Source: Haliotis rufescens (Eukaryota). From it: 64,000 nucleotides of DNA. Position 1 is the first letter of the stretch; each line of letters begins with the position of its first letter. The DNA is taken from the NCBI RefSeq assembly GCF_023055435.1, contig NW_025964361.1, positions 57,784,001-57,848,000 of the forward strand, read 5' to 3'. The notes under the pieces were generated by a model, which was not told the DNA's origin, ran no database searches, and saw nothing but the letters and a program-made list of their open reading frames with translations. Positions 16,904 through 63,705 of the stretch are shown one piece after another. Made by a program: the position numbers and the translations under genes.

Positions 16904-16967
16904 ATGGCGGACGCGAGGAGTCTAATGTACGGTGTCGTGATGTCAGGATGCATACAGCTAATACTTG
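16904..16967 (+). CDS. A1 exon 1, signal peptide
   Basis: AACATGGCG start context, MADARSLMYGVVMSGCIQLIL, donor G|GTGAGA. Paralogous to 43562-43628. Confidence 0.75.
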
Positions 16968-19900: not shown

Positions 19901-22900
19901 CAGGGGAGGTAACTCTTGGTCGGACGGTTCTCGGACGGTCTGCAGTGGAATTGATATGTGTGTATCGGTCACAAAGGCACAATGGTGCTGTGGTTGACGT
20001 CAGGTCACCAACATTTTCCAATAGCATATATCCAATTCATATACCGGATTTTTTGTGAAGTCAGGTTGAACAACATACTACATGTGCGTTTCTTTTTTTG
20101 AAGAGTGTAATTTATAGGCACAATATCGACTTTAAGAAGACAAATGGCGGCCATCTTGAATTTTCGGTGGCTTACGATTTGTCTTCTTAGTTACCCAACG
20201 GCGACCAACCATACATCATTTATCATCATTTCACACCGCTCCACTATATAACAATTATTAAAAATAGGTTAAAATTAGAAGTGATTGCTCTTTTCATGCA
20301 GAAAACGTAGCCTACAATAAAAACGCAACATCTCCTTATCGACTGTTCCCAAGTGACCCTCCCTGGTCTGCAGACAACGCTGTAGATGGGAACAGGGACC
20401 AGGATGTGCAGGGAAACTCCTGCTTCCACTCTGCTGACAGCGTTCAAGCTGTGTGGACAGTGGACCTGGGACAGCAATACAGGATACATGACGTCAGGAT
20501 ATACAACCGGGCAGGATGTCAGTATTATACCCAATTTCATTGATTTTCGTATCTTCTTTTGTTACATGTACGTACATGAAAGATGGAGCAAACTTTTAAT
20601 GGGGTAACTATTACTTGTAATTATCTATTAACATTTAGCTCTTCAACAGCGTTGACGTGAAGGTACAATTGTAATTGTTATCTGAGACACACATATATGC
20701 ATGTGACACCAAAGATCATCTCTGGACTTTTGTATTTTATCTACCTCTATCTATATCTGTATACCATACATACCTACATCTAAATGCAGGAATATCGGGT
20801 AGACGTCGGGAAGGATTTTAATATACTGTAGGTACCTATGAAGGCAGAGTGTATAAAAGATTTTATTACCCACCACATGATTGAAACTTTTGTAGAACAT
20901 GTTCCTTGGGAGGTCAATGTCTGACATATTTAAAGTAAAAACCTGCCGAACTCAAGAAATATATTTTTTGGCGTATGTCATACTTAACTGCACATTGTCA
21001 TACACCCTAGGCGACTCATCTGAAATTTGGTTGGAGATACTGCTTAAATAATTATAGAAAGGTAGGCGCATCCTGCCCTACCGGTGGTGCAAGCGCGGGT
21101 GTTTACAAACACATGCATAGGCAAGTCAAGTGTTCTCCTGAACAAACAAAGGAACATATGGTACAAGTTAAAATATGGAAGTTCATCGGACATCCTTTTG
21201 GACAAATTTAGATATGTCCTCCACATGTCTAGAATAAAACGGGCCTTGAATGATGTAAACCTGATTAAACAACTTGTGAACCCCTTGAAATCAACTTTGA
21301 AAGAGCATACAATTACTGTTATGAAACGAGGAATCGTACAATATAACACTTTGTTTAGACATCCAGCATGTCATATGACATGTCAACTCAATGGAATTTT
21401 CCAAAACTAGTCCCAGCGTCCCCGAACCACTCCCCAACTCTAGAAGATCTAGAAGATCGTCCTTCAAATAATTGAAATTTAAGAGACACTGCTATTCTCT
21501 ATATTAACTTTAAAAGCACGAATAGGAATATAAAGCCTGATATTAACCACCCCATTTGTGATATAGTTAAGGACTGACTGTGTATTTCTTTCGGTAGATT
21601 GAGGCATGAATAAAACCGATGCCCAAACTGAGAGAATCCGTGTCTCGATAACGTGCCGGCTAGCAATGAACTCCCAAGACATGAAATGTGGGGCCTGGAA
21701 CCCAGTCTAGCGGGAAAAAACAGGCGAGCAAGCCTGCACGTTTTCTGTTTCATTCCTTCTCGGCCTTCGGCCTCAAAGGGTAGTTTTGACAATACATTTG
21801 CATGAATTTCGCTAAATGTCATGTGCGTGTTGATAAACGGGAGCAGAAAGGGAATTATCTTGACAGTAATATTGGGATTCCCCGACATCCCATAGTAATA
21901 AAAGTAGTCCGCCTTGTTGGGCGTGGCTTATTTTTTTACTTTCATTGGGAAATAATTGCAATAACACGTGACCAATTCATCTTATGAGAGTGCAGGAATT
22001 ACAATGAACACAACGAAAATTTAATTATTGCCAAATGATGGGTGTTTACATAAAAACTCATATTTCGGAAAACCATTAACTAAAGATTTAGTGAACGTTT
22101 TGCAATAGTGTTTGTGCACCTAACACCACGTCTGTGTATAAAGCCTAATAAAAGTAGTCCCTGCTTGGTAAACTCATTTGCATATATACTGGATCGTGAT
22201 TATTGGACTGGTTCATCGCATCGCTAACACTAACCATACATGCCCTAACAATACGGGAGCCAGAACAGGTTATACATTGTATGTTGAAAATAGAGATTAT
22301 CATAAGAGCATGTTTGTGTGTCATGGTTATTTTAGGAAACGAGTGTCAGAATTCTTGTATTTCCCGAGCGAAAGCGAGGGTAATAAAATTTCGTTATTGC
22401 CCAATATGTCTAAATCCGTTAGAGGCCACCTCCAGAAAAATGCACTGATCAGGATTGGCGTCTTAGAAAACAGGAATTGTCTAATGACGTCAAGAATCTT
22501 CAGCTATGACGTCGTTTCTAGTGTGACGTCATTCCGACCTTACATCACAATAAGATTCGCAAAACGTCAACAATTCCGTCCGGATGACGTTAACAATAGA
22601 CTGGTGCGCGTGAATTGATATTTGCACACATGCACATTCGATGTTTATGAACCCGATTATTTGTATCTCTATGGGGAACCAACTGGAACAGTGTTAAACA
22701 AATATCACATCATCATGATCTTACAGAAGGAACACACATATTTTTGTTTTTCCCTGACAGATGTCACGAGGATCCAGGAGGCTGTCCTGTCTTTGAGTAA
22801 CATCAGCTCCACACACGACACCACCTGCTACACCTTCCCATCCAACATCACAGAAGGCAACTCAGTCTTTGACGTGAAGTGTGACGGGAGGGCTAGATAT

Positions 22901-25900
22901 TTGACCATAACACACAATACAACGACCCTCAATTTGTGCGAGGTTGAGATATATGGTAGGATCACACACGTTATATTTGGAGGTTAAATGTGTTTTAGGT
23001 TAAATGGAATATGAGTAATGCCTTTTCATATAAGTGTTAATGAATACATATATGTAAGTGTAATTTGCTGTAATAAATATATTTATAACGACTTAATATC
23101 ATTTACTTAAAAAATAGGGGGCACGGGTGGCCCAGTCGAATAAGGCGCCGCGATTCGCTGTGCAGAGTTGCGTCCCTTGGGAGCGCCAGAAACCTATGAT
23201 TGTGGGTTCGAATCCCGGTTCGCCCCGATTATGTTTCTAGGTTTGTCAGCACCATACCCGTGCTCGTGGGTTTCACCGAAGTGGTAAACATCTGAGACCT
23301 GCATCACTCCTAACTTTTCTCCCACATTAAGCTGACACGCCGTGATATAACTGGAATAATGTTAAAAGCGGCGTTAAACCCAACTCACTCACTCACTAAA
23401 GAAATAAAACCTTGGATTGATGAAATGGGAAAGGCAAATGGATTCAGGTACATTCTCAGTAAATATGAACATTTCTTTGAAGTGATAAAACTAATACTTT
23501 ATTACTCCCGCTATCGTGACATTCATTCAAGATATAACAAAAGCAGCATTTGTTCGGCCATACATGACATGCTGTTAATCATACTTCTTTAAGTTTGCAG
23601 TCCAGGCGTTTTCGGTGAAAACTGCAGTAATTTCTGCCATTGTTCCAATGAGCCCTGTCACCCAGTCAGTGGTGTGTGTCCTGCAGACTGTAGACCAGGG
23701 TGGCAGGGAGACAGGTGTGATACAGGTGAGGAGATTCAGTCAGTGGTGTGTGTCCTGCAGACTGTAGACCAGGGTGGCAGGGAGACAGGTGTGATACAGG
23801 TGAGGAGGTTCAGTCAGTGGTGTGTGTCCTGCAGACTGTAGACCAGGGTGGCAGGGAGACAGGTGTGATACAGGTGAGGAGATTCAGTCAGTGGTGTGTG
23901 TCCTGCAGACTGTAGACCAGGGTGGCAGGGAGACAGGTGTGATACAGGTGAGGAGGTTCAGTCATTGGTGTGTGTCCTGCAGACTGTAGACCAGGTAGGC
24001 AGGGAGACAGGTGTGATACAGGTGAGGAGATTCAGTCAGTGGTGTGTGTCCTGCAGACTGTAGACCAGGGTTGCAGGGAGACAGGTGTGATACAGGTGAG
24101 GAGATTCAGTCAGTGGTGTGTGTCCTGCAGACTGTAGACCAGGGTGGCAGGGAGACAGGTGTGATACAGGTGAGGAGATTCAGTCAGTGGTGTGTGTCCT
24201 GCAGACTGTAGACCAGGTAGGCAGGGAGGCAGGTGTGATACAGGTGAGGAGGTTCAGTCAGTGGTGTGTGTCCTGCAGACTGTAGACCAGGTAGGCAGGG
24301 AGACAGGTGTGATACAGGTGAGGAGGTTCAGTCAGTGGTGTGTGTCCTGCAGACTGTAGACCAGGGTGGCAGGGAGACAGGTGTGATACAGGTGAGGAGG
24401 TTCAGTCAGTGGTGTGTGTCCTGCAAACTGTAGACCAGGTAGGCAGGGAGACAGGTGTGATACAGGTGAGGAGGTTCAGTCAGTGGTGTGTGTCCTGCAG
24501 ACTGTAGACCAGGGTGGCAGGGAGACAGGTGTGATACAGGTGAGGAGGTTCAGTCAGTGGTGTGTGTCCTGAAGACTGTAGACCAGGGTGGCAGGGAGAC
24601 AGGTGTGATACAGGTGAGGAGGTTCAGTCAGTGGTGTGTGTCCTGCAGACTGTAGACCAGGTAGGCAGGGAGACAAGTGTGATACAGGTGAGGAGGTTCA
24701 GTCAGTGGTGTGTGTCCTGTATACTGTAGACCAGGGTGGCAGGGAGACAGGTGTGATACAGATGAGGAGATTCAGTCAGTGGTGTGTGTCCTGCAGACTG
24801 TAGATCAGGGTGGCAGGGAGACAGGTGTGATACAGGTGAGGAGGTTCAGTCAGTGGTGTGTGTCCTGTATACTGTAGACCAGGGTGGCAGGGAGACAGGT
24901 GTGATACAGGTGAGGAGGTTCAGTCAGTGGTGTGTGTCCTGCAGACTGTAGACCAGGGTGGCAGGGAGACAGGTGTGATACAGGTGAGGAGGTTCAGTCA
25001 GTGGTGTGTGTCCTGCAGACTGTAGACCAGGTAGGCAGGGAGACAGGTGTGATACAGGTGAGGAGGTTCAGTCAGTGGTGTGTGTCCTGCAGACTGTAGA
25101 CCAGGTAGGCAGGGAGACAGGTGTGATACAGGTGAGGAGATTCAGTCAGTGGTGTGTGTCCTGCAGACTGTAGGCAGGGATACAGATGTGATACATCTAA
25201 ACAGAGCATTACAATTACTGCATCGTTGATGATTAAGATTTCTCCCCCTGTTAGTTTGTTCATTAACATGTTTATGTTGTGTTGTGTTTTGTTGCTGACC
25301 AAATCAAAACCTTGTATTTTCAGTGTGTGCTGAGAACCATTACGGTGTCAGCTGTAAAGACGTTTGCTCCAACCGGAGATGTTTAGATCCGTCGTCGTCA
25401 TGTGACCGCTACACGGGGACGTGTGACAGTGGGTGTACTTCCGGTTGGACTAATGTTGACTGTGCTCAAAGTAGGAATTTGCTTTTGTTAAATACTATAC
25501 ATGTATCGTATCGTTTTATTACAGGCGCACGGCTGCATACGGTTGAAAACAAAGATAGTGTTTACTGAGCCTGAGACCTTTGTCCTGATACGCATTGTAG
25601 TACACTTTACTTGCAAAATCGATTGTTGATTTACAGGTTTTAAATAATATTTATTTTCATATGAAGATGACTTATATTAAACGTTATGCATTTGACATCA
25701 CTGCTTCAGAATAGACGACACTGGTCACATTCATATTCAAATATTTACCATGCAAAGTAATTGTATTCCAATTTTGATTATCCTATATATGAATGTAATC
25801 TGGTTCACTCGGCATGAACAAGGTTTAGATATCCATATATGTTATCGATAAACAACCAACTTGTTGATATAGTTCCACTGTAAGCTTTTCATACTCGTAT

Positions 25901-26582
25901 TTGAACAGGGTGTTCTGGGTCGTATGGGCAAAACTGCAGGGAACCCTGTTCTACCAGGAAATGCAAGGGTAGCTCACCTTGTGACCACGTTACGGGGACG
26001 TGCGTTTCCGGATGTCAGGAGGGATGGAAGGGTAAAGATTGTAAAGAAGGTAATTCCCAGATGGAAAACAGTTCAAGTAATAGGTCTAGGTAAATAAAGC
26101 AAATTAAAACTCTGTCCCAAAGCTTCTCACAGTTCTGAAAAAAATACAGTTTCAGCAACATGTAGAGGTTGACACGTTGCATATATGAGCCGTTAATGCT
26201 TTATAACCATGTCGTAAATATTGTAGGATCAATATAGTGACGTTGCCAAAAAATGGTTTCACATATTGTTTTCACATAATTTTATGGATAACGTGAAAAT
26301 GATGGAATATATGTATAATTATCGCTTTAATAAAAAACATTTATTGCAAAATTCCGATACTCACACTTGTTAATGTATTGCCATATCTCAAATAGATACA
26401 GAGTTGAGGTTAATACTTCATGCCAGATTTCTTAAATATTTCAGCCTGTGACAGTCAACATTATGGGTCTAACTGTGACAAGACCTGTGCCTCTAGACAC
26501 TGTGTGGGGAACTCTTCCTGTAACTCAACAGGGGACTGTGACAGGGGATGTGAGACAGGGTGGACACTGGGCGACTGTACAG
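16904..26582 (+). CDS. Module A1: signal peptide-EGF-F-type lectin-EGFx4 receptor ectodomain (8 exons)
   Basis: Exons 16904-16967, 17632-17772, 20302-20517, 22761-22955, 23594-23725, 25324-25470, 25909-26049, 26445-26582. All GT-AG and phase 1, joining into one open frame. Confidence 0.88.
17632..17772 (+). CDS. A1 N-terminal EGF-like exon
   Basis: GTCSPGTFGDSCFYSCHCGDSCDQTTGVCGGDCDAGWVGGRGENCQK, 141 nt. Confidence 0.92.
18911..20109 (-). mobile_element. Degenerate Tc1-like transposon in an A1 intron
   Basis: TIRs tatactcttcaaaagaagaaaagcaca / tgtgcgtttctttttttgaagagtgta. WFSDESRF and GGGSVMVWGAI motifs. Confidence 0.9.
20302..20517 (+). CDS. A1 F-type lectin domain, exon a
   Basis: ENVAYNKNATSP...AVDGNRDQDVQGNSCFHS...WTVDLGQQYRIHDVRIYNRAG, with HX26R spacing. 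Absent from the ORF track. Confidence 0.92.
22761..22955 (+). CDS. A1 F-type lectin domain, exon b
   Basis: YVTRIQEAVLSL...CDGRARYLTI...LNLCEVEIY. Confidence 0.92.
23117..23397 (+). mobile_element. tRNA-derived SINE family 3 (Leu-like head, long A-B spacing)
   Basis: A box tggcccagtcg, B box gggttcgaatccc, (cact)n tail. Many copies in the window. Confidence 0.9.
23594..23725 (+). CDS. A1 EGF-like exon
   Basis: VCSPGVFGENCSNFCHCSNEPCHPVSGVCPADCRPGWQGDRCDT. Confidence 0.92.
23663..25196 (+). repeat. 74-bp minisatellite derived from an exon end plus splice donor (20 units plus a partial)
   Basis: cagtcagt starts at 23663, 23737, 23811 ... 25143. Confidence 0.97.
25324..25470 (+). CDS. A1 EGF-like exon
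   Basis: VCAENHYGVSCKDVCSNRRC...GWTNVDCAQ. Confidence 0.9.
25909..26049 (+). CDS. A1 EGF-like exon
   Basis: CSGSYGQNCREPCSTRKCKGSSPCDHVTGTCVSGCQEGWKGKDCKE, donor G|GTAATT. Absent from the ORF track. Confidence 0.9.
26445..26582 (+). CDS. A1 EGF-like exon
   Basis: ACDSQHYGSNCDKTCASRHC...GWTLGDCT. Confidence 0.9.
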
Positions 26583-26698: not shown

Positions 26699-26730
<32 letters not shown>

Positions 26731-26766: not shown

Positions 26767-26897
26767 NNNNNNNNNNNNNNNNNNNNNNNNNNNNNNNNNN
26801 NNNNNNNNNNNNNNNNNNNNNNNNNNNNNNNNNNNNNNNNNNNNNNNNNNNNNNNNNNNNNNNNNNNNNNNNNNNNNNNNNNNNNNNNNNNNNNNNN
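26767..26897. other. Assembly gap
   Basis: N run preceded by (TG)n, a poly-G tract and a repeated gtatagaccagggcgacggt. Confidence 0.99.
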
Positions 26898-43561: not shown

Positions 43562-43628
43562 ATGGCGGGTGTGAGGACACTGTTAGTATGGATAGTTGTG
43601 GCAGAGTGTTGGATACAGCTCATAAAAG
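43562..43628 (+). CDS. B exon 1, signal peptide
   Basis: MAGVRTLLVWIVVAECWIQLIK, donor AG|GTGAGT, phase 1. Confidence 0.8.
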
Positions 43629-52600: not shown

Positions 52601-55600
52601 TTTGACTTATATTACACGCGATCGCGGGAGAAGATGAAATTAATAACTTAGATGTAAGTTTGACAACTTTTAGATATATTTTATATGTAATATATGTAAT
52701 ATGTATATATGTATGTATACCTTTGTATAGTTTATTTAAAGATATGTTTGACACGTCTTTATTTTGTTCTTTGACATGTGCGATGTGGACCCGTTATAGA
52801 AGTGTGTGTCCAAGAAAATTATTTTCAATAACATTGTGGAAAATAGTGAATAATTGTTTAACTTATCAATAAAAAATATTAATTGAAATGGAATACGTAT
52901 TTCAAACAGTGAAATGTGAGAGATTTAATAAATGAATGAAATGACAGGTTAGTTCATAAAATCCTATACTATTTTGGCGTGACTACGGCATGGGCATTCC
53001 ATCGGCCTACGGGGTCTGGAGCCTCGAGGCTTCTTGGCCGGTGTACCTGCTTACTGTGTTGAAAGATTTAAAGCTGACATCTTGCGGTGTGACTCACTCC
53101 AAATTTGTACTTCCAATCCGTGGTGCAAACACGAATTTCTGTATTTCTTTGTAGCAAGTAATATTAATGTTTTACATGTACGCGAGGAAGCGGAATGAAC
53201 TCTTTACTTTTATTTTCTATTTTTAGTCTGCAGTCAAGGAACTTTTGGCGCAGATTGTAACAATTTCTGTCATTGTTCTGTTGGACCCTGTGACCGAGTC
53301 AGTGGATTTTGTACTGGTAACTGTAGACCAGGGTGGCAGGGACAAAGCTGTTCTGTTGGTAAGGAAATAGTATAACTACTGTTGACATGCAACAATACTT
53401 TATGAGAATACGATTTGATACATCCTTGAATGAAAATAAACTTTTATCCCATGCTAGGTATTAATCTTAATATTTTATCAAGCCAAATAAGAAACGAATT
53501 CCTATGCCTTTCTTTATAAGGTTCTACCCGTGAAGATCCGGGGTAGCATAGATTTTCAGCAACCCATGCTTGCCGACTAACGGGATCGGGTGGTCAGGGT
53601 CGCGGACTTGGTTTACGCATGTCATCGAACCCAATTGCATGGATCAATGTTCATGATGTCAATCACTGGATTTTCTGGTCCAGACTCGATCATTTACAGA
53701 CCGCCGTCATATAGCTAGAAAATTTGCTGAGTGCGGCGTAAAACAACAAACCAAACCAAAACGTTATAAGGTTCAAAGCTATTTTCCCCTTTACGCCAAA
53801 TTTTAATCTGTTTCAGCGGATGATCTAGACTGGTTATTCTTTTGCACTGACAATCTATATTTCACAGAGTGTGATCGGGACCATTACGGAGTCAACTGTG
53901 ACGAGACGTGTGGGAACAGGAAATGTGCTGCTGATACACCGTCACAGATTGACTTAAAACTAGTTGTAGAACACTAAACAATTCTGAGTATTAAGGTACG
54001 ACAAAATATAAAAATGGGGCTATAGATCGCCAGCAACAAGGGTAAGATCACCATACTGGGGACCAAGGGGACTTACGGTACCTCTGCTACCTGCATGGTT
54101 CCCCAGCAGGATTTACACTTCCCCGAGTTACTGGTGATTATTGCGAGTTTAGCCAGATATTAAAAGTTAACAAATATTCTGCAGTTAAAATAGAGGTAGA
54201 TATAAATATACTTTGAAAGAGGTGGTCTTACATACCCTCTCAGGGGGACAATAATTTTACGCTGCTTCAACCCCCGTCGAGGGTATAGCCACGAACAGTC
54301 TCAGATACTAATTATACACTACCGATTTATAAAATACATAACTTTTTACATCAAAATTTGTGAATGAGATCTATATCTTTTAAAAAGTTAATGATTAAAT
54401 GTGAATTAACATTGCTAAAAAGGTCCTTCACTGTTTTGACAGTAAAATATTTATCCCTTGTGATGGAAAAATCAATACAGTCAAGCAGGACATGCTTGAC
54501 TGTGATTATCTCATCACAAGGGATACAAAACGGAGGATCCTCACCTTTTAATAAATATTCATTAGTATATCTACTATGGCCAATACGACATCGTCGTAAA
54601 ATGACCTCCTCAAATCTGGACTGACAACCCAAGTAGGTGTAACCGATATTTGGTTTAATTTGATGTAATTTATTGAGACCTACATGAGTGTCCCACTTCA
54701 TCTGCATTAGATCTCTGATGTAAGATCTAATGAGAGGTTTAAAATCACTGTATGGGATAAGAAGTGGTGTCACAAATTTGTTGAGTGCTGCTTTTGCAGC
54801 AGCATCAGCCATTGTGTTACCTTTTATGCCCATATGACTGGGTAACCAACAAAAGACGATGTCGAATTGGCCAGTTGAAAGATCATTGTAAAGTTCTATA
54901 ATATCTAAAATCAGTGGATGAGTCGAAGACACATTATTTAGTGCCTGAAGGCAAGAAAGAGAATCAGAAAAGATGATATATTGTTTACATGCAGACTGTT
55001 GTTGAATGTATATCAATGCTGTAAGAATAGCATTGGCCTCAGCAGTGAAAATAGAGCTATTGTCTGGTATTTTGAGGATATTATTTTTGATCCACCGACA
55101 GTGGCACTGTCTACTTTGCCACCATCCTTGGACCCATCAGTATAGATTGAATGGTGAGTGTCATATTTATTTCTTAATTGTAAATATTCCTGTTGATAGA
55201 ATAGCTGGTTAGTGTCAGATTTAAGATAACGTGTGAGGGAAATGTCTACTTCTGGCCTCACCAACTGCCAGGGAGGAGAAGGCAAAAGTCGGTAAGGAGA
55301 GATGATGTCCAGATCTAGATTTGCAGCAGTAATATGAGATTTGAGCCGAATTCCAAGTGGAGGAACCATCTTTGGTTTCTTCTGAAACAATTCTTCATAT
55401 AGGGGATTAAAAACGGAGTCATTAGCAGGATTTGAGGGATTGGAACGTAATTTAGTAATATACTGGAGAGACAATTTAATACGGCGTTGTTTTAAAGAGG
55501 GTTCATCAGCCTCGATACACAGGCTGTCAACCGGGGAAGTCCGAAAAGCACCAAGACAAAGTCTTAATCCTTGATGGTGGATTGAATCCAGTTTTTTTAA

Positions 55601-58600
55601 ATTACTCTTGCAAGCTCCAGCATACACAATGGAGCCATAGTCCAGCTTAGAGCGAATTAGAGATCTGTATAAGTGAAGAAGGGTTTTCTGATCCCCTCCC
55701 CACTTTGAGTTTGATACGACTTTTAGCAAATCTAAGGCCTTCAGGCATTTTGCCTTTAGATATTTAATATGTGGCAAAAAAGTTAGATGATGGTCGAAAA
55801 TTAATCCTAAAAAATTGGCTTCTTTTACAATCTTGATTGGGGTGCCATCTAAAAAGAGTTCAGGAACTTTATGAGGTTTTTATTTCCGACAAAAATGGAT
55901 ACAATTGGTCTTGGTGTGTGAAAACTTAAAGCCATTTTCAAGACACCATTTATGAATTTTATTAAGACACAACTGTAATTGGCCATGGCGTTCAATAGTG
56001 CGCATATTTTTACCACGACATGAGATATTAAAATCATCCACAAACAATGACCCATCAATTGAGTCATTTTGATAGACTATTTATTTTTATACTGAACAAT
56101 GTAACAGACAAGATACTGCCCTGTGGAACTCCCTGATCCTGATTATAATGATCAGACAAGGTTGATCCAACACGAACTTGAAATTGTCTGTCCGTTAAAA
56201 ACTGCGATATAAAATGAGGCAAACGGCCTCTTAAACCGAAGTCGTGTAAATCTTTTAAAATACCATGTTTCCATGTTGTATCATAAGCTTTTTCAAGATA
56301 AAAAAAGATTGATACAGCATGCTGGCTATTTACAATGGAATTTTTAATGAATGATTCTAAACGAACCAGATGGTCAATAGTACTTCGATTTTTGCGGAAA
56401 CCACATTGAATATTGGTAATAAGATTATTGGTTTCTAAAAACCATACTAATCGGTTATTGACCATGCGTTCCATGGTTTTACCAACGCAGCTAGTTAACG
56501 AAATAGGTCGATAATTAGATGGATCAGTATGATCCCGGCCAGGTTTTGGTATAGGGATAACAATGGCATTGTGCCAGGAAGGAGGAAAGTGTCCAGTTGT
56601 CCAAATATTATCAAAAATATTTAGAAGTGTTTCTAGACATGGATTGGGTAAATGTTTAAGGAGCTGATAGTGGATATTATCAGCTCCTGTTGCGGTGTCA
56701 TGAGCTTGCGCTAGGGCAGTATTGAGCTCATGTAGTGAAAATACTTCATTGTAGTCTTCACCGTTATCTGAATTAAAATTAATAGTTTTCTTTTCTTGTA
56801 ATTTTTATATTTCTGAAATTTGGGATTATAATTGGCTGATGAAGAGCGTTTTGCTAAAGTTTCACCCAACTTATTTGCGATGTCTACTTTGTCAGTTAGT
56901 AGACCATGATCATCTTTAAGATGATGAACGCCAGAATTTGAACCCTTCGCTTTGATTCTTTGTACCATGTTCCACACCTTTGTCATTGGTGTACGGGAAT
57001 TAATCTTTGATACAAAGTTTCTCCAAGACTGTCGCCGATTTTGTTTGAACGTACGTCGAGCCTTGGCACTATTTATCTTTACATTATTTAAATTGTGTAC
57101 TGTAGGGTGACGGCGAAAGTATTTTTCAGCCTTCCTCCTACTCTTCCTAGCCTGTTTGCAATCATCTGTAAACCGTGGTTTACGATTGCGAATATGTTGG
57201 TTAACAGAGGACTTTGGAATAGTTATATCAGCAATATTATTCAGATTGTCCGTGAACAACTGAATAGGGTCAGGGACATTGATAAAAATATCAGATTTTA
57301 ATTTGTCGGTACAAAGTGTTTGAAATAATGGCCAATTGGCCTTAGTAAAATTCCACCTTGTCGCAGGTGGATCATCAGTTGGGTTAATAGCTGAAAGAAT
57401 TGTGGGGAAATGGTCACTGCCACATAGGTCATCATGGACAGACCAATCAAATTCGTTATAAATGTTTGAATCTGTGAGTGACAGATCAAGTGCAGAAAAA
57501 GTTCCTGTAGCGGGATGTAAATATGTGTCGGAACCATCATTAAAGATGCATAAATTATTATTTGAAAGAAGTTTCCCTTTAGCATTGAAGTCTGTACTTC
57601 CCCATAGAGGGTTAAGCCCATTCAGATCTCCCATAATGATACAGGGTTTTGGAAGTTGGTCAAACACATTTTGAAGGTCAGACTGCTGAAGGGAGGAAGA
57701 CGGAGAAATGTACAAGGAGCACAATGTGAAGGTTATATGCAAAGAAAGTCTAACTGCAACAGCTTGAAGGTTGCATTTAAGAGAGAGAGGGCTATGGATG
57801 ATACCCTGCCTCACTAAAATAGAGGCATCGCCAGTGGCTTTATCTCCTGGAGGTGAAAAGCAATGATATGAAGTGTACCGACGAAGATCAAATTTATCTG
57901 TATTTTTTAGATATGTCTCTTGTAAACTAAAAGCTGATGGTTGTAAATCTTGTGTCAATAATTGAAGATCACTAAAATTGTTCCTAAGTCCTCTGCAATT
58001 CCATTGTATTAAATTGATAGACTGGCTCATGGAGGTTCAACTGGGGACCGTGGTCGTGTGGATGTGCCACTTTCAGGTACTGAATGAGAAGGAGCAACGT
58101 CCATGTCAAGTGGTTCAAACGAATTTTGAACCGTAACAGGAGCTGCCAAAGGAGATGACACCTCCAAATGTTGAAGAGCTTTGGTCCTTTTCTTTAGCTG
58201 TTTCTTTTGTGTTTTTGTGAGGTGAACAACACCCTGGACTATTTCACGAGAAGAATCAGTATCTAGGGTTGTTTCTGGTTGTGGCTCCTCAGTCTGGCTG
58301 GCTGAAGAACGTTGACAATGTTGTGAAATTTGTATGTTTTCATCTAAGTTTATCTGGGCTTCATTAATCCAAGATATCACTGTTTGGTAGGAAGTCGAGA
58401 CTGATGTAGATTTAGTAGGAGTGACTGGAGAAGAAGAAGAAATTGCAGCTGAATATGTTAGACTAGTGGTAGGTGCTGATTGTGCAGGAACTAATTTCTT
58501 TGCTTCAAAATAAGAGATGTTATTTTTGCATTTGAGTGTGATAATTTTGGTCTCATGTACAAAATTCGGACAGGATTTAGAAGATGCCACATGCTCACCA

Positions 58601-61600
58601 CTGCAGTTGGCACACTTCATGTCATTTGTGCATTCGGAGCTCTCATGAGTTCCACTGCAGCGTGAGCATCTTGCTTTGTTAGTGCAAGACCTTGCACCAT
58701 GTCCAAACCTTTGACACGTATAACATCGGAGTGGATTTGGTACATAGATTTCCACACCGATGTTACAATAACCTGCTTTAATGGATTTGGGAAGTGTTGT
58801 CAGTCCAAAAGTAAAAAGATATGTGTTTGTTTTGATAATGTTTGAATCCAGTTTCCTTGTAAAACGATTTACAGAGGATACTCCTTGTTCTTGTAACTCA
58901 GATACAATGTCTTCTTCTGTCATGTCTGAAAGACAACGCGACTAGTCTCTGACAATACCTCTACACGTATTCAGTGTCTTGTGTGCTGAAACAACAACCC
59001 GGGTGTTTACAAACTGCTGTAGACCCAGCAGATTGAGCGATTGTTGCCTCTTCATACATTCTACTAAAAGTGAACCGCTCCGGAGGCGAGTAACATTTTT
59101 AACGTCTCCGCAGACACCTTGGATGCCCTTTGATACAGCAAAAGGATTAAGTTTTAATGGACTACCATCTGCAGCTTCTATGACCAAGAACCTTGGCCAA
59201 GAATCCTTTCCTAAAGTAGATACTTCTTCATCATCATCAGAAGAAGATAAATGTCTTCTCTTATTTTCTTTGGATGAACCAGATTGTGAGTGTTGAGCCA
59301 TGGTATGAGAATAAGTTTCAGCAACCTTGCTCCCCACCCACCATCGAGTGTCAACAAGGACGATGTTGCAGTGGAAGCCAGACAGCAACACCAGGGTTAC
59401 AATGATGTTATACTCCAGAAATACAGACATAAATAGCCAAGAATTCCAAAAGAAGAAATGTCTGACTGGTTCGGCCCATGACAATATTCCCAAGAAACTC
59501 GGAATTCAGAGGTCTATATCACCAGATTGGCCCATGAGCCACCGCCTTCTAGCATAGGACTCTAGGCAAAAGTAACAATACAACAGTTTTGAAAATAAAG
59601 TTACAGTTTAACATTGGACATGTGATTCAAAATAAGAGATTGTCCATGCGCAGGGCATGACATGACCAGCCGATTGTTAGAATCGGGCCCATTCTATCAC
59701 CCGTCTAGGTGAAGTAAGGGTCGAAGTGGTGTGTTGGGCAAAAGGAACACTGTTCCTGGCTCCAGTGCCCTCAACCACCAGAATCCCGTCCTCCACCGAC
59801 ACAGGGGCGCAACCCACGGCAAACGGGTTGCCCAATTCGGTCGCCTCGTACGACCAGCAATGGGGTGCTGTGGACAAATTCTACCCCGAGTCCACACGGG
59901 GGAAGAGCTATTAGCGTTACCCAGCACTCACCACGAGGAGGTTGCTCTTCACGAGTGCCCACACTTCCATGGATATATCCCCATAAATATTCACGATCCC
60001 TATTTGTTTGTTGTATAGATCTACATATCCTCCACACCCGTCACCCTCGGCAATTAAACCATTTCATTTGGCCCCTCTTAAGAAGGTGTCATATTGTCTC
60101 TCACTGGTCATTGAGCCTTAGGTAACATCTCTCAACAGCATGCTATAGTACTTCAGGGATAATTTCGTTTATTTCTTATAGACATGCTGGTGTACTTTCT
60201 TGACCACTGGGTATCTATTCCGGTGCAATATAAAATTAGATAAATAGTGTATGTACAAGTTGATCAGTACGTCAGTATGTACGTGCTACAATTACAATAA
60301 CAGAGCTATAATGTTATTGTCAGGGAACGTTTTATATGTGCCCAATATTGGGTATATCTTTACAGAATGTTCCCTTGGGACCTATGGACAAAACTGCAGC
60401 AAGCAATGTACTCAGAGGAATTGTGCAGGAAACTCGTCATGTGATCACGTTACAGGAACATGTGTTGCCGGATGTAAAGCAGGTTGGATGGGCAAAGACT
60501 GTGTGGAGGGTAAGGGCTTAAATACCATCTGTATGTAAAAGAACTTTGTGTTGTAAAGGCTCTATACAATGCGGGAACGCCGTTTCCAGAACTTTACATA
60601 CCACACTAGTATCTAAATAAAGTAACTTCCTGATGACTGGTAGATTAAATAGTACTACGTCCCTGACAACTAATCACTGCCCAAATACAATGCAGGGAGC
60701 GTCTACCGAATCTTTCCAGAAATAATATAACACAGTTATTATCATTGTTAAACAATAAAATACACTGCCATGAAACAGAACGTCAAAATGTGCATGCCAT
60801 AATCACAGTAACAGAGCTATAGTGTTATTGTCGCGGTGCGTTTTATATGTGTCCAATAACGACTTTATTTTAACAGAATGTTCCCTTGTGACCTATGGAC
60901 AAAACTGCAGCAAGCAATGTACTCAGAGGAACTGTGCAGGAAACTCGTCATGTGATCACGTTACAGGAACATGTGTTGCCGGATGTAAACCAGGCTGGAG
61001 GGGCAAAGACTGTGTGGAGGGTGACGGCTTAAAGTCCATCAATTAGTGCATTATGTCATCAAAATGTATTTTATTCCGGTTCAATATAAAAGTAGTTAGT
61101 GTATGTAAACGTTGTCAAGTACTGTTGGATCTACATGTCCACTACACCTGTCACCCTCGGCAATTAAACCATTTCATTAGGCCCCTCTTAAGAAGGTGTA
61201 ACATTGTCTCTCACAGGTCATTGAACCTTAAGTAACATCTCTCATCAGTATGCTATAGTACTTCAGGGATAATTTCGTTTATTTCTTATAGACATGCTGG
61301 TGTACTTTCTTGACCACTGGGTATCTATTCCGGTGCAATATAAAATTAGATAAATAGTGTATGTACAAGTTGATCAGTACGTCAATATGTACGTGCTACA
61401 ATTACAATAACAGAGCTATAATGTTATTGTCAGGGAACGTTTTATATGTGCCCAATATTGGGTATATCTTTACAGAATGTTCCCTTGGGACCTATGGACA
61501 AAACTGCAGCAAGCAATGTACTCAGAGGAACTGTGCAGGAAACTCGTCATGTGATCACGTTACAGGAACATGTGTTGCCGGATGTAAAGCAGGTTGGATG

Positions 61601-63705
61601 GGCGAAGACTGTGTAGACGGTAAGGGCTTTAAGTCCATCGATTAGTGCATTATGTCTTCGAAATGTATTTTATTCCGGTTCAGTATAAAAGTAGATAGTG
61701 TGTGTAAACGTTGTCCAGTACTGTTACGTGTTGATTCCCAAAATGTAACATTATGTTCATCCAGAATCTGTATGTAAAAAAACTTTGTGTTGTAAGGATC
61801 TATACAATGCGGGAACGCCGTTTCCAGAACTTTACACAACACACTAGTATCTAAATATAGTAACTTCTTGATGACTGGTAGATTAAATAGTACTAGTTCC
61901 CTGACAACTAATCACTGCCCAAATACAATGCAGGGAGCGTCTACCGAATCTTTCCAGAAATAATATAACACAGTTATTATCATTGTTAAACAATAAAATA
62001 CACTGCCATGAAACAGAACGTCAAAATGTGCATGCCATAATCACAGTAACAGAGCTATAGTGTTATTGTCGCGGTGCGTTTTATATGTGTCCAATAACGA
62101 CTTTATTTTAACAGAATGTTCCCTTGTGACCTATGGACAAAACTGCAGCAAGCAATGTACTCAGAGGAACTGTGCAGGAAACTCGTCATGTGATCACGTT
62201 ACAGGAACATGTGTTGCGGGATGTAAAGCAGGCTGGATGGGCAAAGACTGTGTAGATGGTAAGGGCTTAAATACCATTGATTAGTGAATTCTATTTTCGA
62301 AATGTATTTTATGTTTTAGGTACCAGTTCAAAATACTGATTTTTTTACATTTTATATCATGTTACAACTATGGTCGAAACTGTTCCAAGACTTGAACCAC
62401 CACACATTGCGTGGGGAATCTCAACAGGGCATTGTGTCACCGGGTGTCTTCCTTGGTGGACAGCGGTGGACTGTACAAAGGGTACACATTAATAATGAAA
62501 TTATAACAATTGTTGAATCCAGATATGTTTGTGTGATGCTATGCCATATAGATAATAGTATACAGAATGTTGGACGTGTATTATACCGAACCAAAAACGT
62601 TAAGGCTCATGAATGTTTTTGGGATATGTTTTGTAGTGCAGACTGAGCACACACATTCATAGATATATCCCCCAAAATATTCACGATCCCTATTTGTTTG
62701 TTCACTAAAGATCTACATATCCACTACACCCGTCACCCTCGGCAATTACACCATTTCATTTGGCCCCTCTTAAGAAGGTGTAACATTGTCTCTCACAGGT
62801 CATTGAGCCTTAGGTAACATCTCTCAACAGCATGCTATAGTACTGCAGGGAGAATTTCGAGTATTTCTTACAGACATGCTGGTGTACTTTCTTGACCACT
62901 GGGTATCTATTCCGGTGCAATATTAAAGATATATAGTGTATGTACACGTTAACCAGTACGTCAATATGTACGTGCTACAATAACAATAAAAAGGTTATGG
63001 TGTTATTGTCGGGGCACGTTTTATATGTGCCCAATATTGGGTATATCTTTTCAGAATGTTCCCCTGGGACCTATGGACAAAACTGCAGCAAACAATGTAC
63101 TGACAGGAACTGTGCAGGAAACTCGTCATGTGATCATGTTACAGGAACATGTGTTTCCGGATGTAAAGCAGGCTGGATGGGCAAAGACTGTGTGGAGGGT
63201 AAGGGCTGAAATTAAAGTCTATCAATTAGTGCATTATTTCTTCAAAATGTATTTTATGTTCTTGGTACCAGTTCAGAATAATGATATTATTACATTTTAT
63301 ATCATGTTTCAGCTTGCAAAGCCCATCGCTATGGTCGAAACTGTGTTAGGACTTGCGCCACCAGACATTGTGCTGGGAACTCATCTTGTAACTCCACAGG
63401 GAACTGTGACAGCGGGTGTGAGACAGGGTGGACACTGGACGATTGTACAGGTAATGGTTCTGCATGTCACCTCCAAGAGGATTCGGTCTGTTGGGAAGAT
63501 GACAGTGGAGTTACACACGGTTGATGAAGTCCAACTTCAATGCAAAGCGGGATGTATTTCTTTGCAGCTTGCAACAGTCAACATTATGGAGCAAAGTGCA
63601 CCAAGCTCTGTGTCTCGAGATACTGTGTGGGGAATTCATCCTGTAACTCTACAGGGCACTGTGACAGTGGGTGTGAGAGAGGGTGGACACAGTCAGACTG
63701 TACAG
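43562..63705 (+). CDS. Gene B: signal peptide-EGF-F-type lectin-long EGF stalk receptor (3' end outside the window)
   Basis: Exons 43562-43628, 48295-48435, 49456-49668, 50498-50695, 53227-53358, 60366-60509, 60877-61020, 61476-61619, 62115-62258, 63055-63198, 63313-63450, 63568-63705. Open if the broken exons at 49240, 53868 and 62367 are skipped. Confidence 0.82.
43936..44003 (+). pseudogene. Duplicated, degenerate signal-peptide exon
   Basis: MADVRVLHVWTVVVESWILFND. The upstream gggttata..cacg.ccttgttgtccaat is duplicated too. One extra base shifts the donor to phase 2. Confidence 0.75.
44060..44830 (-). mobile_element. Penelope-like element 3' fragment (GIY-YIG endonuclease)
   Basis: GVINQINCDCGDSYTETSRPVDTRIKEH...HSEA...INRD. 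Degenerate hammerhead-like motif near 44070-44110. Confidence 0.8.
45894..46589. repeat. MITE/foldback structure with ~135-bp inverted arms
   Basis: 45911-46048 is inverted relative to 46455-46589. A separate 15-bp inverted repeat tattctaaaggtgct / agcacctttagaata spans 45894-46132. Confidence 0.85.
46717..47958 (+). mobile_element. Degenerate mariner transposon
   Basis: TACGAGG...CCTCGTA ends. IYHYDPEFKGQSVEWHHSTSPAPKK, LFHDN, GQRYDDNDDLKAAV, CIEKQGDYVE. Confidence 0.85.
47656..47820 (-). mobile_element. SINE family 1 nested in the mariner
   Basis: TSD ctgactataattga. Confidence 0.93.
48295..48435 (+). CDS. B N-terminal EGF exon
   Basis: GSCPAGKFGDLCSYFCHCGNDCNRTTGVC...GWVGGHGKTCQK. Confidence 0.92.
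49240..49386 (+). pseudogene. 3'-truncated F-type lectin exon a
   Basis: GNIVKGKSATSPSGVWDAAWTPDKAVDGNRDQDVLNSCFHSLWNQTHDS, then a switch to intron sequence. No donor. Confidence 0.9.
49456..49668 (+). CDS. B F-type lectin exon a
   Basis: ENVAYNKNATTPSGLYHHDPPWSADKAVDGNRDQDVFHNSCFHAGRYPSVWKVDLGQPYKIHDVRIYNRAK. Confidence 0.92.
49710..49865 (+). mobile_element. SINE family 1, diverged
   Basis: B box and tail conserved. Confidence 0.85.
50498..50695 (+). CDS. B F-type lectin exon b
   Basis: YILRIRTAALSV...CDAIGQYVTI...LNLCEVEIY. Confidence 0.92.
53227..53358 (+). CDS. B EGF-like exon
   Basis: VCSQGTFGADCNNFCHCSVGPCDRVSGFCTGNCRPGWQGQSCSV. Absent from the ORF track. Confidence 0.92.
53525..53763 (+). 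mobile_element. SINE family 4 (5'-truncated)
   Basis: TSD ttataaggttc, tail ccgccg...cggcgtaaaacaacaaacc. Related relics near 3840-4030 and 45310-45495. Confidence 0.8.
53868..53944 (+). pseudogene. B EGF exon truncated by the LINE
   Basis: ECDRDHYGVNCDETCGNRKCAADTPS, then non-EGF sequence and a stop. Paralogue of 25324-25470. Confidence 0.88.
54351..58030 (-). pseudogene. LINE ORF2 (APE-RT-RNase H), frameshifted
   Basis: IQWNCRGL, LQET, GDLN, GSDH; QCGFR, LEKAYD, GVPQGS, LFVDD; YTDGS, FSDS, WLPSH..GN..AD; CIPC...HVLLDC. Confidence 0.93.
58027..59301 (-). pseudogene. LINE ORF1 (gag-like, three CCHC knuckles) with one in-frame stop
   Basis: CYTCQRFGHGARSC, CSRCSGTHESSEC, CANCSGEHVASSKSC. 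TAG at 58942-58944. ATGA overlap with ORF2. Confidence 0.92.
60366..60509 (+). CDS. B EGF exon, copy 1
   Basis: ECSLGTYGQNCSKQCTQRNCAGNSSCDHVTGTCVAGCKAGWMGKDCVE. Confidence 0.9.
60877..61020 (+). CDS. B EGF exon, copy 2
   Basis: Near-identical to copy 1, with a weaker donor GTGACG. Confidence 0.82.
61476..61619 (+). CDS. B EGF exon, copy 3
   Basis: Near-identical, donor GTAAGG. Confidence 0.88.
62115..62258 (+). CDS. B EGF exon, copy 4
   Basis: Near-identical, donor GTAAGG. Confidence 0.88.
62367..62480 (+). pseudogene. Decayed EGF pseudo-exon
   Basis: Homologous to 63313-63450, but the acceptor is lost (ttacaa vs tttcag), with deletions and an in-frame TGA. Confidence 0.8.
63055..63198 (+). 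CDS. B EGF exon, copy 5
   Basis: ECSPGTYGQNCSKQCTDRNC...GWMGKDCVE. Confidence 0.9.
63313..63450 (+). CDS. B EGF exon
   Basis: ACKAHRYGRNCVRTCATRHCAGNSSCNSTGNCDSGCETGWTLDDCT. Confidence 0.9.
63568..63705 (+). CDS. B EGF exon
   Basis: ACNSQHYGAKCTKLCVSRYCVGNSSCNSTGHCDSGCERGWTQSDCT. Confidence 0.9.

What the first reader, a model, noticed from the sequence alone, without database searches (positions are those of the whole stretch)
16904..63705. Tandem cluster of diversifying F-type-lectin/EGF membrane receptors with a Tyr-signalling tail
Seen: three paralogous modules share the order EGF-lectin-EGFn. A1 and B have a signal exon; A2 ends in a TM exon and a Tyr-motif tail. Stalk length varies (4+, 2, 8+), every ectodomain exon is phase 1-1, and exon debris is scattered through the locus. 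Known: F-type lectins are glycan pattern-recognition domains (also used in oyster bindin), and EGF-stalk receptors with Tyr tails (CED-1/Draper/MEGF10, SCARF) drive engulfment. Inference: this is a birth-and-death family of variable glycan receptors for immune, allo- or gamete recognition. An automated pipeline would likely label them only MEGF10-like.
Basis: partly seen in the sequence, partly recalled or inferred. Interest (0 to 1): 0.88.

Follow-up and report, generated by a model that had tools for sequence, protein, structure and literature searches.

The report
Abalone lectin-headed paired signalling receptor cluster
The window holds two real red-abalone genes from a family of at least 57 close lectin-exon copies: membrane receptors with a fast-changing fucose-lectin head on an EGF stalk, joined inside the cell either to an ITAM-like tyrosine tail or to a tyrosine phosphatase, which resembles vertebrate paired immune receptors, but function and expression were not tested here.

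Summary
All the exons exist on the + strand with AG/GT borders, and all 23 intact ectodomain exons are phase 1-1.

- A1 and A2 are one RefSeq gene (XP_048243462/3, named "MEGF10/11"). Its order is signal, EGF, F-lectin, 4 EGF, EGF, F-lectin, 2 EGF, TM, then a 116-aa tail with two YxxL/I-x13-YxxI pairs.
- The RefSeq model bridges both N runs in frame.
- Module B is not a Tyr-tail gene. It runs past the window into intact tyrosine-phosphatase exons. Its third EGF exon is cut off beside a LINE, and its last exons are inverted.

The lectin is a true F-type lectin (AAA E 2.7e-14; fold TM 0.74). It keeps the His/Arg/Arg triad but lacks Asp81 and the Cys-Cys pair.

Genome-wide there are at least 57 close copies of the lectin exon. 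About 29 lie in the last 2.2 Mb of this chromosome, with ITAM-tail and phosphatase-tail genes interleaved. Ectodomains of opposite-tail genes are 81-82% identical.

The binding loops CDR1-3 give dN/dS 1.6 against 0.5 for the framework; a cross-validated version reaches 1. The lectin-EGF-phosphatase architecture occurs across molluscs, and I found no paper on it.

First-reader notes s1-816427 and s1-810476 describe the same kind of receptor on other DNA of this genome.

The parts
16904..16967 (+). Gene A exon 1: start codon and signal-like peptide, 21 codons plus 1 base, donor GTGAGA
   Evidence: N-terminus of RefSeq P0151/P0016
17632..17772 (+). Gene A, first unit: EGF1 exon, phase 1-1
20302..20517 (+). 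Gene A, first unit: F-lectin exon 1 (CDR1-3, His52 and Arg79 equivalents). Skipped in RefSeq isoform X2; its donor GTCAGT departs further from the consensus than the GTATGT of the other two copies
22761..22955 (+). Gene A, first unit: F-lectin exon 2
23594..23725 (+). Gene A: first post-lectin EGF exon of unit 1
23663..25173 (+). 74-bp minisatellite, 20 copies, built from the exon's 3' end plus its donor site
25324..26582 (+). Gene A: three further EGF exons (25324-25470, 25909-26049, 26445-26582)
26767..26897 (.). N run 1: intronic, with no coding sequence across it in the RefSeq model
27476..27616 (+). Gene A, second unit: EGF1-type exon, spliced to 26582 in the RefSeq models
28245..28454 (+). 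Gene A, second unit: F-lectin exon 1
33900..34097 (+). Gene A, second unit: F-lectin exon 2
34431..34559 (+). Gene A: post-lectin EGF exon of unit 2, followed by the same 74-bp minisatellite (34493-35193, 9.5 copies)
35416..35559 (+). Gene A: last EGF exon
35993..36134 (+). Gene A: acidic linker, transmembrane helix and RRR stop-transfer. The exon runs about 3 bases into N run 2 (36135-36266)
37033..37378 (+). Gene A: cytoplasmic tail exon with stop codon. Motifs YEGL-x13-YCSI and YETI-x13-YVNI
43562..43628 (+). Gene B exon 1: signal-like peptide, donor GTGAGT
48295..48435 (+). Gene B: EGF1 exon
49456..49668 (+). Gene B: F-lectin exon 1
50498..50695 (+). Gene B: F-lectin exon 2
53227..53358 (+). 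Gene B: EGF2 exon
53868..53977 (+). Gene B: third EGF exon. Family homology stops at about 53945; the RefSeq model P0010 reads on to a stop codon here
54351..59493 (-). Frame-broken LINE (endonuclease, reverse transcriptase, RNase H) lying where the rest of B's third EGF exon should be
60366..63198 (+). Gene B: five near-identical EGF exons (60366-60509, 60877-61020, 61476-61619, 62115-62258, 63055-63198) from a recently duplicated 1.1-1.24 kb two-exon unit
63313..63705 (+). Gene B: two membrane-proximal EGF exons (63313-63450, 63568-63705). TM, juxtamembrane and phosphatase exons follow 0.2-7.3 kb past the window end
49224..49418 (+). Debris: decayed copy of lectin exon 1 just upstream of B's intact one
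37891..38121 (-). Debris: fragment of lectin exon 2 on the opposite strand

Best explanation
The locus is the proximal edge of a large tandem family of single-pass membrane receptors in red abalone.

Build of each receptor. A signal peptide is followed by one EGF module, an F-type lectin head and a stalk of 2 to 9 MEGF-type EGF modules. All of these are encoded by phase 1-1 exons. Inside the cell the receptor carries one of two signalling ends:
- a short tail with one or two ITAM-like YxxL/I...YxxL/I pairs, as in gene A here; or
- a catalytic protein-tyrosine-phosphatase domain, as in gene B here, the next gene C, and others.

Shown: the gene structures; the identity of the lectin; the size and layout of the family; the two tail classes; near-identical ectodomains on opposite tails; and excess amino-acid change in the loops that ring the sugar pocket.

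Inferred mechanism. The lectin head binds fucosylated or related glycans. Its fine specificity is set by hypervariable CDR1-3 loops and an unusual CDR4. Ligand clustering of ITAM-tail members would allow Src-type phosphorylation and recruitment of a Syk/Shark-type kinase, which activates the cell. Phosphatase-tail members with similar heads would remove phosphotyrosine at the same contact sites. The two classes would then act as a paired activating and restraining set.

How diversity arises. Tandem duplication, exon duplication and loss, and tail exchange generate variety, and the uniform 1-1 phase makes these changes tolerable.

The two genes in the window. Gene A is an unusual two-headed fusion of two such units. 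Gene B is a decaying member.
For: Gene models:
- RefSeq proteins P0151/P0016 (gene A) and P0010 (5' part of gene B) map at 95-100% identity, mostly 100%, onto the exons I had predicted independently.

Lectin identity:
- Pfam PF22633 E 6.6e-30.
- Solved F-type lectins FBP32 E 6.6e-18 and AAA E 2.7e-14, with His52, Arg79 and Arg86 aligned.
- AlphaFold2 model pLDDT 81.6. The top ten Foldseek hits are all F-type lectins; 1k12 has TM 0.74 and rmsd 2.6.

Family size and layout:
- At least 139 lectin-exon hits, 57 of them close, with about 29 on C583 between 57.80 and 59.92 Mb.
- 19 phosphatase-type juxtamembrane exons and 11 Tyr-tail exons alternate one-to-one with lectin exons.

Phosphatase members:
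- B's phosphatase exons keep the WPD loop and the HC-X5-R motif.
- P0021 matches PF00102 at E 1.6e-81.

Pairing of heads and tails:
- P0164 (ITAM tail) and P0165 (phosphatase) are 82% identical over 490 ectodomain residues, and their tails are unrelated.
- P0160 and P0171 are 81% identical over the ectodomain.
- On the ectodomain tree, tail type needs at least 12 changes over 44 rows, no fewer than label shuffles give.

ITAM-like motif:
- Present in 11 of 15 tails. Composition-preserving shuffles give a mean of 0.13 and a maximum of 2.
- Conserved in paralogue tails that are only 35-38% identical overall.

Selection on the lectin:
- CDR1-3 dN/dS 1.60 (1.27-2.02) against framework 0.52 over 26 independent pairs. 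dS is similar in both classes, 0.13 and 0.10.

Precedent: ITAM-Syk-ERK signalling has been shown in oyster haemocytes for CgIgR (PMC6994640).
Against:
- Gene A's own Tyr pairs are spaced 13 residues apart, just outside the canonical 6-12.
- CDR4 lacks Asp81 and the Cys82-Cys83 pair that contact fucose in AAA. Fucose binding is therefore unproven. One sub-clade has also lost the His and the first Arg.
- The CDR borders were set after I had seen the alignment. With columns chosen on other paralogues, dN/dS is 1.41 (0.95-2.1) and 1.06 (0.69-1.66), so relaxed constraint is not excluded.
- Gene B is damaged.
- The RefSeq models are predictions, and the single-gene reading of A1 plus A2 rests on them and on the absence of a signal, TM or tail exon between the two units.
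- Opposite signalling by the two tail classes is an analogy, not a result.
Confidence: 0.6

Rival explanations
1. These are ordinary cell-adhesion or developmental receptors. In this reading the lectin-EGF receptor phosphatases and their short-tailed relatives read endogenous glycans during tissue patterning, neural wiring or shell and mantle biology. They would have no role in non-self or gamete recognition, and the loop variation would reflect relaxed constraint after duplication.
For: - The lectin-EGF-phosphatase architecture is old and occurs across molluscs: octopus, oysters, scallop, clams, mussels and snails.
- Receptor phosphatases are classically adhesion and guidance molecules (general knowledge).
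- Cross-validated dN/dS intervals include 1.
Against: - At least 57 close copies lie in tandem arrays with lineage-specific clades.
- The variable positions sit in the loops that ring the sugar pocket, and dN exceeds dS there.
- Both patterns are typical of recognition families under changing ligands, not of conserved developmental receptors.
Confidence: 0.22
2. These are gamete-recognition or self/allo-recognition molecules. The variable F-lectin heads would act on sperm or egg surfaces, or in self-recognition, as the F-lectin bindins of oyster sperm do.
For: - Oyster bindin is a diversifying F-type lectin (PMC5712786).
- Abalone is a classic system for fast-evolving fertilisation proteins (general knowledge).
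- The CDR loops show dN/dS above 1.
Against: - Bindins are secreted acrosomal lectin repeats. These proteins are membrane receptors with ITAM-like or phosphatase tails, which points to signalling in somatic cells.
- No gonad expression data were obtained.
Confidence: 0.08
3. The window's copies are largely non-functional: decaying duplicates and annotation artefacts. Gene A would be a read-through merge of two dead or partial genes, and gene B a pseudogene. Any functional relatives would lie elsewhere in the cluster.
For: - B has a truncated exon beside a LINE and inverted terminal exons.
- RefSeq isoform X2 of gene A skips half of the first lectin domain.
- A 20-copy donor-site minisatellite sits in gene A.
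- Gene A has long branches and no clear orthologue in three other abalone species.
- No RNA evidence was obtained.
Against: - All 17 coding exons of gene A that are fully readable in the window are open, with intact splice sites and matching phases.
- Both of A's lectin units keep the fold-defining cysteines, the cation motif and the basic triad.
- The tail keeps all four YxxL/I motifs.
- B's phosphatase exons keep the catalytic motifs.
Confidence: 0.1

Closest known systems
F-type lectins (eel agglutinin AAA, striped-bass FBP32, oyster bindin)
   Same: - The jellyroll fold is the same.
- The His/Arg/Arg sugar-binding triad is kept.
- The AVDGN cation motif and the structural cysteines are kept.
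- Isoform variation is concentrated in CDR1 and CDR2, as in eel and oyster isoforms.
   Different: - Here the domain heads a membrane receptor, between one EGF module and an EGF stalk. It is not a secreted lectin or lectin repeat.
- CDR4 is one residue shorter. It lacks Asp81 and the vicinal Cys82-Cys83, with a Tyr in their place.
- The domain is split by a phase-1 intron inside CDR4.
MEGF10 / Draper / CED-1 / PEAR1 (the names RefSeq gives these genes)
   Same: - MEGF-type EGF repeats and a single TM helix.
- A tyrosine-based tail. Draper signals through an ITAM and the kinase Shark (from my own knowledge).
   Different: - No EMI domain is detected.
- There are far fewer EGF repeats.
- There is no NPxY motif.
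- An F-lectin head is present.
- These genes are not orthologues of MEGF10; the name reflects EGF similarity only.
Vertebrate paired immune receptors (KIR, Ly49, LILR, SIRP, paired Siglecs)
   Same: - They form tandem, fast-evolving clusters.
- Near-identical ligand-binding ectodomains are joined to opposing signalling ends.
- Tail type is scattered over the ectodomain tree.
   Different: - The head is an F-type lectin on EGF modules, not an Ig or C-type lectin domain.
- The ITAM is in cis, not on an adaptor.
- The putative restraining arm is a covalently fused phosphatase, not an ITIM that recruits one.
- Opposite function is not shown.
Receptor-type protein tyrosine phosphatases (RefSeq calls the neighbour 'RPTP epsilon-like'; CD45 and CD148 as functional analogues)
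   Same: - A single TM helix.
- A D1 phosphatase domain with the WPD loop and the HC-X5-R motif.
   Different: - The ectodomain is EGF, F-lectin, then EGFn instead of fibronectin, Ig or MAM modules.
- The genes form a large tandem family.
- The roughly 250 residues after D1 match no Pfam family.
Oyster CgIgR (ITAM receptor that signals through Syk and ERK; PMC6994640)
   Same: It is a molluscan haemocyte receptor with an ITAM in its own tail. It shows that the downstream machinery exists in molluscs.
   Different: CgIgR has five Ig domains, no lectin or EGF modules, and no phosphatase-tailed twins have been described for it.

Membership tests
F-type lectin domain | Significant sequence similarity to solved F-type lectins | tested here: met
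   P0010 (gene B) matches FBP32 at E 6.6e-18, AAA at E 2.7e-14 and lectinolysin at E 8.6e-9. Pfam PF22633 matches above its cut-off in both units of gene A.
F-type lectin domain | F-type jellyroll fold | tested here: met
   The AlphaFold2 model has pLDDT 81.6. Foldseek ranks 1-10 are all F-type lectins; 1k12 has TM 0.74 and rmsd 2.6 A over 146 columns.
F-type lectin domain | Basic triad His52 / Arg79 / Arg86 that binds fucose 4-OH | tested here: met
   The triad is aligned and present in A1, A2 and B. 46 of 55 intact close paralogue exons keep the His and the first Arg.
F-type lectin domain | Typical CDR4 of the motif H-X24-R-X-D-X4-R/K, with Asp81 and the vicinal Cys82-Cys83 | tested here: not met
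   CDR4 reads R-(A/V)-(G/N/K)-Y-x-x-R. It is one residue shorter and has no Asp and no Cys-Cys. Domains with atypical motifs are accepted as F-type lectin domains in the literature (PMC5712786). This lowers the claim of fucose specificity, not the claim of membership.
F-type lectin domain | Cation-binding motif h2DGx and the structural disulfides (Cys50-Cys146, Cys108-Cys124) | tested here: met
   The motif (A/V)VDG(N/D) is present in 54 of 55 exons. The four cysteine positions are nearly invariant in alignment A3 (C110, C164, C182, C201 of P0010).
F-type lectin domain | Binds L-fucose or fucosylated glycans | not testable with these tools
   This needs recombinant protein and glycan arrays.
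MEGF10 / Draper / CED-1 | N-terminal EMI domain followed by a long run of EGF/laminin-EGF repeats | tested here: not met
   The Pfam scan of P0151 returns only the lectin families at E up to 0.01 and no EMI domain. Gene A has 8 EGF modules in all.
MEGF10 / Draper / CED-1 | NPxY motif in the tail | tested here: not met
   Gene A's tail has none. Only 2 of 17 family tails have one.
ITAM-bearing immunoreceptors | YxxL/I - 6 to 12 residues - YxxL/I in the cytoplasmic tail | tested here: inconclusive
   Gene A has two pairs with a 13-residue spacer. 8 of 15 family tails fit the 6-12 spacing and 11 of 15 fit 6-14, while shuffles give a mean of 0.1 and a maximum of 2.
ITAM-bearing immunoreceptors | Tyrosines are phosphorylated and recruit a tandem-SH2 kinase | not testable with these tools
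   The only precedent is oyster CgIgR-Syk (PMC6994640).
Receptor-type protein tyrosine phosphatase (gene B and its neighbours) | Intracellular PTP domain with the WPD loop and the C-X5-R catalytic motif | tested here: met
   P0021 matches PF00102 at E 1.6e-81. B's exons 0.7-7.3 kb past the window end keep WPDH and HC/SAGIGRTG. None of these exons lies inside the window.
Paired receptors (a concept, not a homology family) | Clustered genes with near-identical ectodomains and different signalling ends | tested here: met
Paired receptors (a concept, not a homology family) | Opposite signalling outcome on shared or related ligands | not testable with these tools
   This is inference only.

The most novel reading that the evidence does not exclude
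Molluscs may have an invertebrate counterpart of vertebrate paired immune receptors, built from different parts. A hypervariable F-type lectin head on an EGF stalk would be wired either to a cis ITAM (activating) or directly to a tyrosine phosphatase (restraining). In abalone this set has expanded into a roughly 2-Mb array at the chromosome end, which diversifies through shuffling of phase 1-1 exons and positive selection on the sugar-binding loops.
Probability: 0.35. Interest if true: 0.82.

Novelty: new variant of a known kind. Interest (0 to 1): 0.64.

Why it matters
Invertebrates lack antibodies, and how they obtain specific and balanced recognition is an open question.

This family could offer a concrete, testable system. 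It has dozens of receptors whose sugar-binding loops change fast. They come in look-alike pairs with an activating-type tail or a built-in phosphatase. A fused phosphatase as the restraining arm would be a different solution from the ITIM motifs of vertebrates.

Practical points:
- The RefSeq names for these genes (MEGF10, MEGF11, draper-like, RPTP epsilon-like, uncharacterized) hide one coherent, mollusc-wide family. Annotation and expression studies in farmed abalone, oysters and clams currently split it across unrelated labels.
- The locus is a clear example of how a uniform exon phase allows duplication, loss, fusion and tail exchange without breaking the reading frame.

Tried and rejected
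Steps that failed or gave nothing:
A local script BLAST used the whole window only as the subject, never as the query.
- The look-up of sequencing runs found no holder on record as RNA. Two runs guessed to be RNA hold 6-7% of the words. That is compatible with exons only, but it is not evidence.
- A DNA search for a second copy of A1's signal exon found nothing. B's signal exon was found at the peptide level instead.
- No signal exon was found between A1 and A2. This argues against two separate genes.
- A search with gene A's tail among proteins of similar length found only gene A itself. Paralogous tails appeared only in the six-frame genome search, at 35-38% identity.
- Pfam on single EGF exons gives only sub-threshold DSL hits. 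I did not take these as Notch-ligand homology.
- Literature searches for this architecture returned nothing specific. Bishnoi 2015 is not held, and one search was malformed.

Readings I rejected:
- ITAM tail and phosphatase as alternative 3' ends of one gene. Each lectin exon is followed by exactly one tail type before the next lectin exon, and the paired proteins differ by 18% in the ectodomain.
- MEGF10 orthology (see the membership test).

Exons were searched one by one by reference, and database proteins returned by those searches stood in for the spliced products.

Full report
**Source and layout.** Earlier notes of this scan name the genome as red abalone. The database proteins that match the window come from Haliotis rufescens RefSeq. 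The window is C583:57,784,001-57,848,000 of a 59,995,430-base contig. Two N runs lie at 26767-26897 and 36135-36266.

**Checking the observation.**
- A pattern scan of all six frames found 17 MEGF-type EGF units between 17.6 and 63.7 kb, all on the + strand.
- Every unit has an AG acceptor that leaves two leading bases and a GT donor that leaves one trailing base. Every length is a multiple of three.
- The lectin is split into two exons in each of three copies, with the same phase-1 borders. The three copies are 72-74% identical in exon 1 and 55-63% in exon 2.
- Signal-like first exons lie at 16904-16967 and 43562-43628 and resemble each other.
- A TM exon starts at 35993. A 114-codon tail exon ends at a stop codon at 37376-37378.
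- Exon debris is real: a decayed lectin exon 1 at 49224-49418, a lectin exon 2 fragment on the minus strand at 37891-38121, and a decayed signal-like ORF near 43936.
Post-lectin stalk lengths are 4 and 2 in the two halves of gene A, and 9 in B with one exon broken.

**Gene models and the gaps.** A profile of the three lectin exon 1 translations, searched against 1.84 billion proteins, returned the locus's own RefSeq models.
- P0151 (XP_048243462.1, 827 aa, "MEGF11 isoform X1") and P0016 (XP_048243463.1, 755 aa, "MEGF10 isoform X2") cover A1 and A2 as a single gene.
- P0010 (XP_048243469.1, 286 aa, "MEGF10") covers the 5' part of B.
- They map at 95-100% identity, mostly 100%, onto my exons.
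- X1 contains the first lectin exon 1 with the junction I had predicted. X2 skips that exon.
- The model splices 26582 to 27476 across the first N run, so that run is intronic.
- The second N run begins two bases into the codon after the RRR stop-transfer. The model adds one residue and then enters the tail exon in frame. Coding continuity is therefore supported, with about three coding bases and the donor hidden. I did not fill them.
- No signal exon lies between A1 and A2, and no TM or tail exon follows A1.
- Gene A thus reads: signal, EGF, F-lectin, four EGF, EGF, F-lectin, two EGF, TM, tail.
- Among close abalone relatives it is the only model with two high-scoring lectin domains. Its two units are each other's nearest relatives on long branches.
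- Both units share a 74-bp minisatellite at the same exon end.
- This points to an old internal duplication or a fusion of two neighbouring genes.

**Gene B.**
- Homology of B's third EGF exon stops at about 53945. The RefSeq model runs on to a stop codon.
- A frame-broken LINE on the minus strand follows at 54351-59493.
- The missing half of the exon was not found.
- Downstream come seven more EGF exons. Five of them come from a 1.1-1.24 kb two-exon unit whose copies are 94-98% alike.
- Past the window end I fetched 70 kb. B continues there with a TM exon at +204, a juxtamembrane exon at C583:57,848,680, and phosphatase exons that keep WPD and HC/SAGIGRTG.
- B's last exons lie inverted at +12.5 to +14.5 kb.
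- B is therefore a phosphatase-type member in decay. Because every ectodomain exon is phase 1-1, skipping the broken exon would keep the reading frame. I could not test whether that happens.
- The next gene downstream is P0021 (XP_048243461.1, "RPTP epsilon-like", 1093 aa). It has the same ectodomain plan plus a PF00102 domain at E 1.6e-81.

**The lectin.**
- Pfam places it in PF22633/PF00754.
- Against solved structures it matches FBP32 (E 6.6e-18), eel agglutinin AAA (E 2.7e-14) and bacterial fucose modules.
- An AlphaFold2 model of P0010 (pLDDT 81.6) finds F-type lectins as its ten best structural matches.
- In the AAA alignment, His52, Arg79 and Arg86 are conserved. So are the cation motif and the cysteines of both structural disulfides (read against PMC5712786).
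- Asp81 and the vicinal Cys82-Cys83 are replaced, and the loop is one residue shorter.
- It is an F-type lectin domain with an atypical CDR4. Its sugar specificity is open.

**The family.**
- Lectin exon 1 has at least 139 six-frame matches in the genome, 57 of them close. Fourteen lie at C583 57.80-58.27 Mb and fifteen at 59.22-59.92 Mb, which is the last 2.2 Mb of the contig.
- A phosphatase-type juxtamembrane exon has 19 matches and the Tyr-tail exon 11.
- In the first sub-cluster each lectin exon is followed by exactly one tail exon. There are five Tyr-tail genes and eight phosphatase genes, interleaved.
- Tyr tails that are only 35-38% identical keep the same tyrosine motifs.
- Among 15 full-length short-tailed family proteins, 11 carry YxxL/I-x6-14-YxxL/I and 8 fit the canonical 6-12 spacing. 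Shuffled tails give a mean of 0.13.
- Gene A has two such pairs with 13-residue spacers.
- Opposite-tail genes share ectodomains: P0164 and P0165 are 82% identical over 490 residues, and P0160 and P0171 are 81% identical.
- On an ectodomain tree of 44 abalone sequences, tail type needs at least 12 changes, no fewer than random labels. Species form their own sub-clades rather than one-to-one orthologue sets.
- The lectin-EGF-phosphatase plan also occurs in octopus, oysters, scallop, clams, mussels and snails.

**Diversification.**
- Aligned paralogue exons have a fixed framework and three variable stretches. Through the AAA alignment these stretches correspond to CDR1, CDR2 and CDR3, and they are loops in the model.
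- Over 26 independent nearest-neighbour pairs, Nei-Gojobori dN/dS is 1.60 (bootstrap 1.27-2.02) in these loops and 0.52 (0.39-0.72) elsewhere. dS is similar in the two classes, which argues against misalignment.
- I fixed the loop borders after seeing the alignment, so I cross-validated. Columns chosen as variable on other chromosomes give 1.41 (0.95-2.1) here. The reverse test gives 1.06 (0.69-1.66).
- Positive selection is likely but not proven.
- One sub-clade (C583 57.99-58.23 Mb) has lost the His and the first Arg.

**Interpretation.**
- Shown: gene structures, lectin identity, family size and arrangement, two tail classes on similar heads, and loop-focused amino-acid change.
- Inferred: glycan binding, ITAM signalling through a Syk-type kinase, and a counteracting role for the phosphatase twins. 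The only molluscan precedent for the kinase step is oyster CgIgR (PMC6994640).
- I found no paper that describes this architecture. The two F-type lectin reviews list CTLD, pentraxin, CCP, TM and FA58C as partner domains and mention neither EGF stalks nor phosphatases. Bishnoi 2015 could not be read.
- First-reader notes on other DNA of this genome describe the same kind of lectin-EGF-ITAM receptor.

**Verdict.** The genes are already in RefSeq under uninformative names. What appears to be new is the reading of the family as paired ITAM and phosphatase F-lectin receptors.

Noticed in passing
window 23663-25173 and 34493-35193: A 74-bp minisatellite (20 and 9.5 copies) is made from the last 49 bases of an EGF exon plus the first 25 bases of its intron, so the consensus donor is repeated many times. 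Each unit also holds an AG...GT-bounded 39-base piece in phase 1-1. The RefSeq models use only the first donor, and reading through meets a stop codon after 41 codons. The repeat is absent at the same exon of genes B and C.
   Followed up: partly
window 54351-59493 (minus strand): A LINE with endonuclease, reverse-transcriptase and RNase H pieces in broken frames, plus two upstream ORFs, one of them with CCHC knuckles. It lies exactly where the 3' half of gene B's third EGF exon is missing.
   Followed up: partly
L002 (C583:57,858,001-57,868,000), about 12.5-14.8 kb past the window end: The last three coding exons of a phosphatase-type gene lie inverted, next to a direct copy of the final exon. 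This is a local rearrangement at the 3' end of gene B.
   Followed up: partly
C583 57.80-59.92 Mb of a 59.995-Mb contig: The family fills the terminal 2.2 Mb of the contig in two blocks of opposite orientation. This may be a subtelomeric array. The 58.27-59.22 Mb stretch between the blocks was not examined.
   Followed up: no
L021-L026 (C583 57.99-58.23 Mb): A sub-clade of six paralogues has Asn/Gln in place of the sugar-binding His in five of them, and His-Gln in place of Asn-Arg. It contains both ITAM-tail and phosphatase-tail genes in alternation.
   Followed up: partly
window 30321-31845: A 31-bp satellite (about 49 copies) lies inside the 5.4-kb intron that splits the second lectin domain of gene A. 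A shorter array of the same unit is at 29295-29500.
   Followed up: no
window 292-1474; 11133-14354; 19369-19972: A 23-bp satellite that is open in one frame, and Tc1/mariner transposase remnants on the minus strand (HTH_Tnp_Tc3_2, E 7e-9). One of these remnants lies in gene A's first lectin intron.
   Followed up: partly
P0021 residues 846-1093: About 250 residues after the phosphatase domain match no Pfam family. They are conserved among the phosphatase-type paralogues and may be a degenerate second phosphatase domain.
   Followed up: no
P0001 (Nucella lapillus, 2865 aa): The best hit of the lectin profile is a dog-whelk protein with 37 matched lectin stretches, an extreme tandem F-lectin array.
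   Followed up: no
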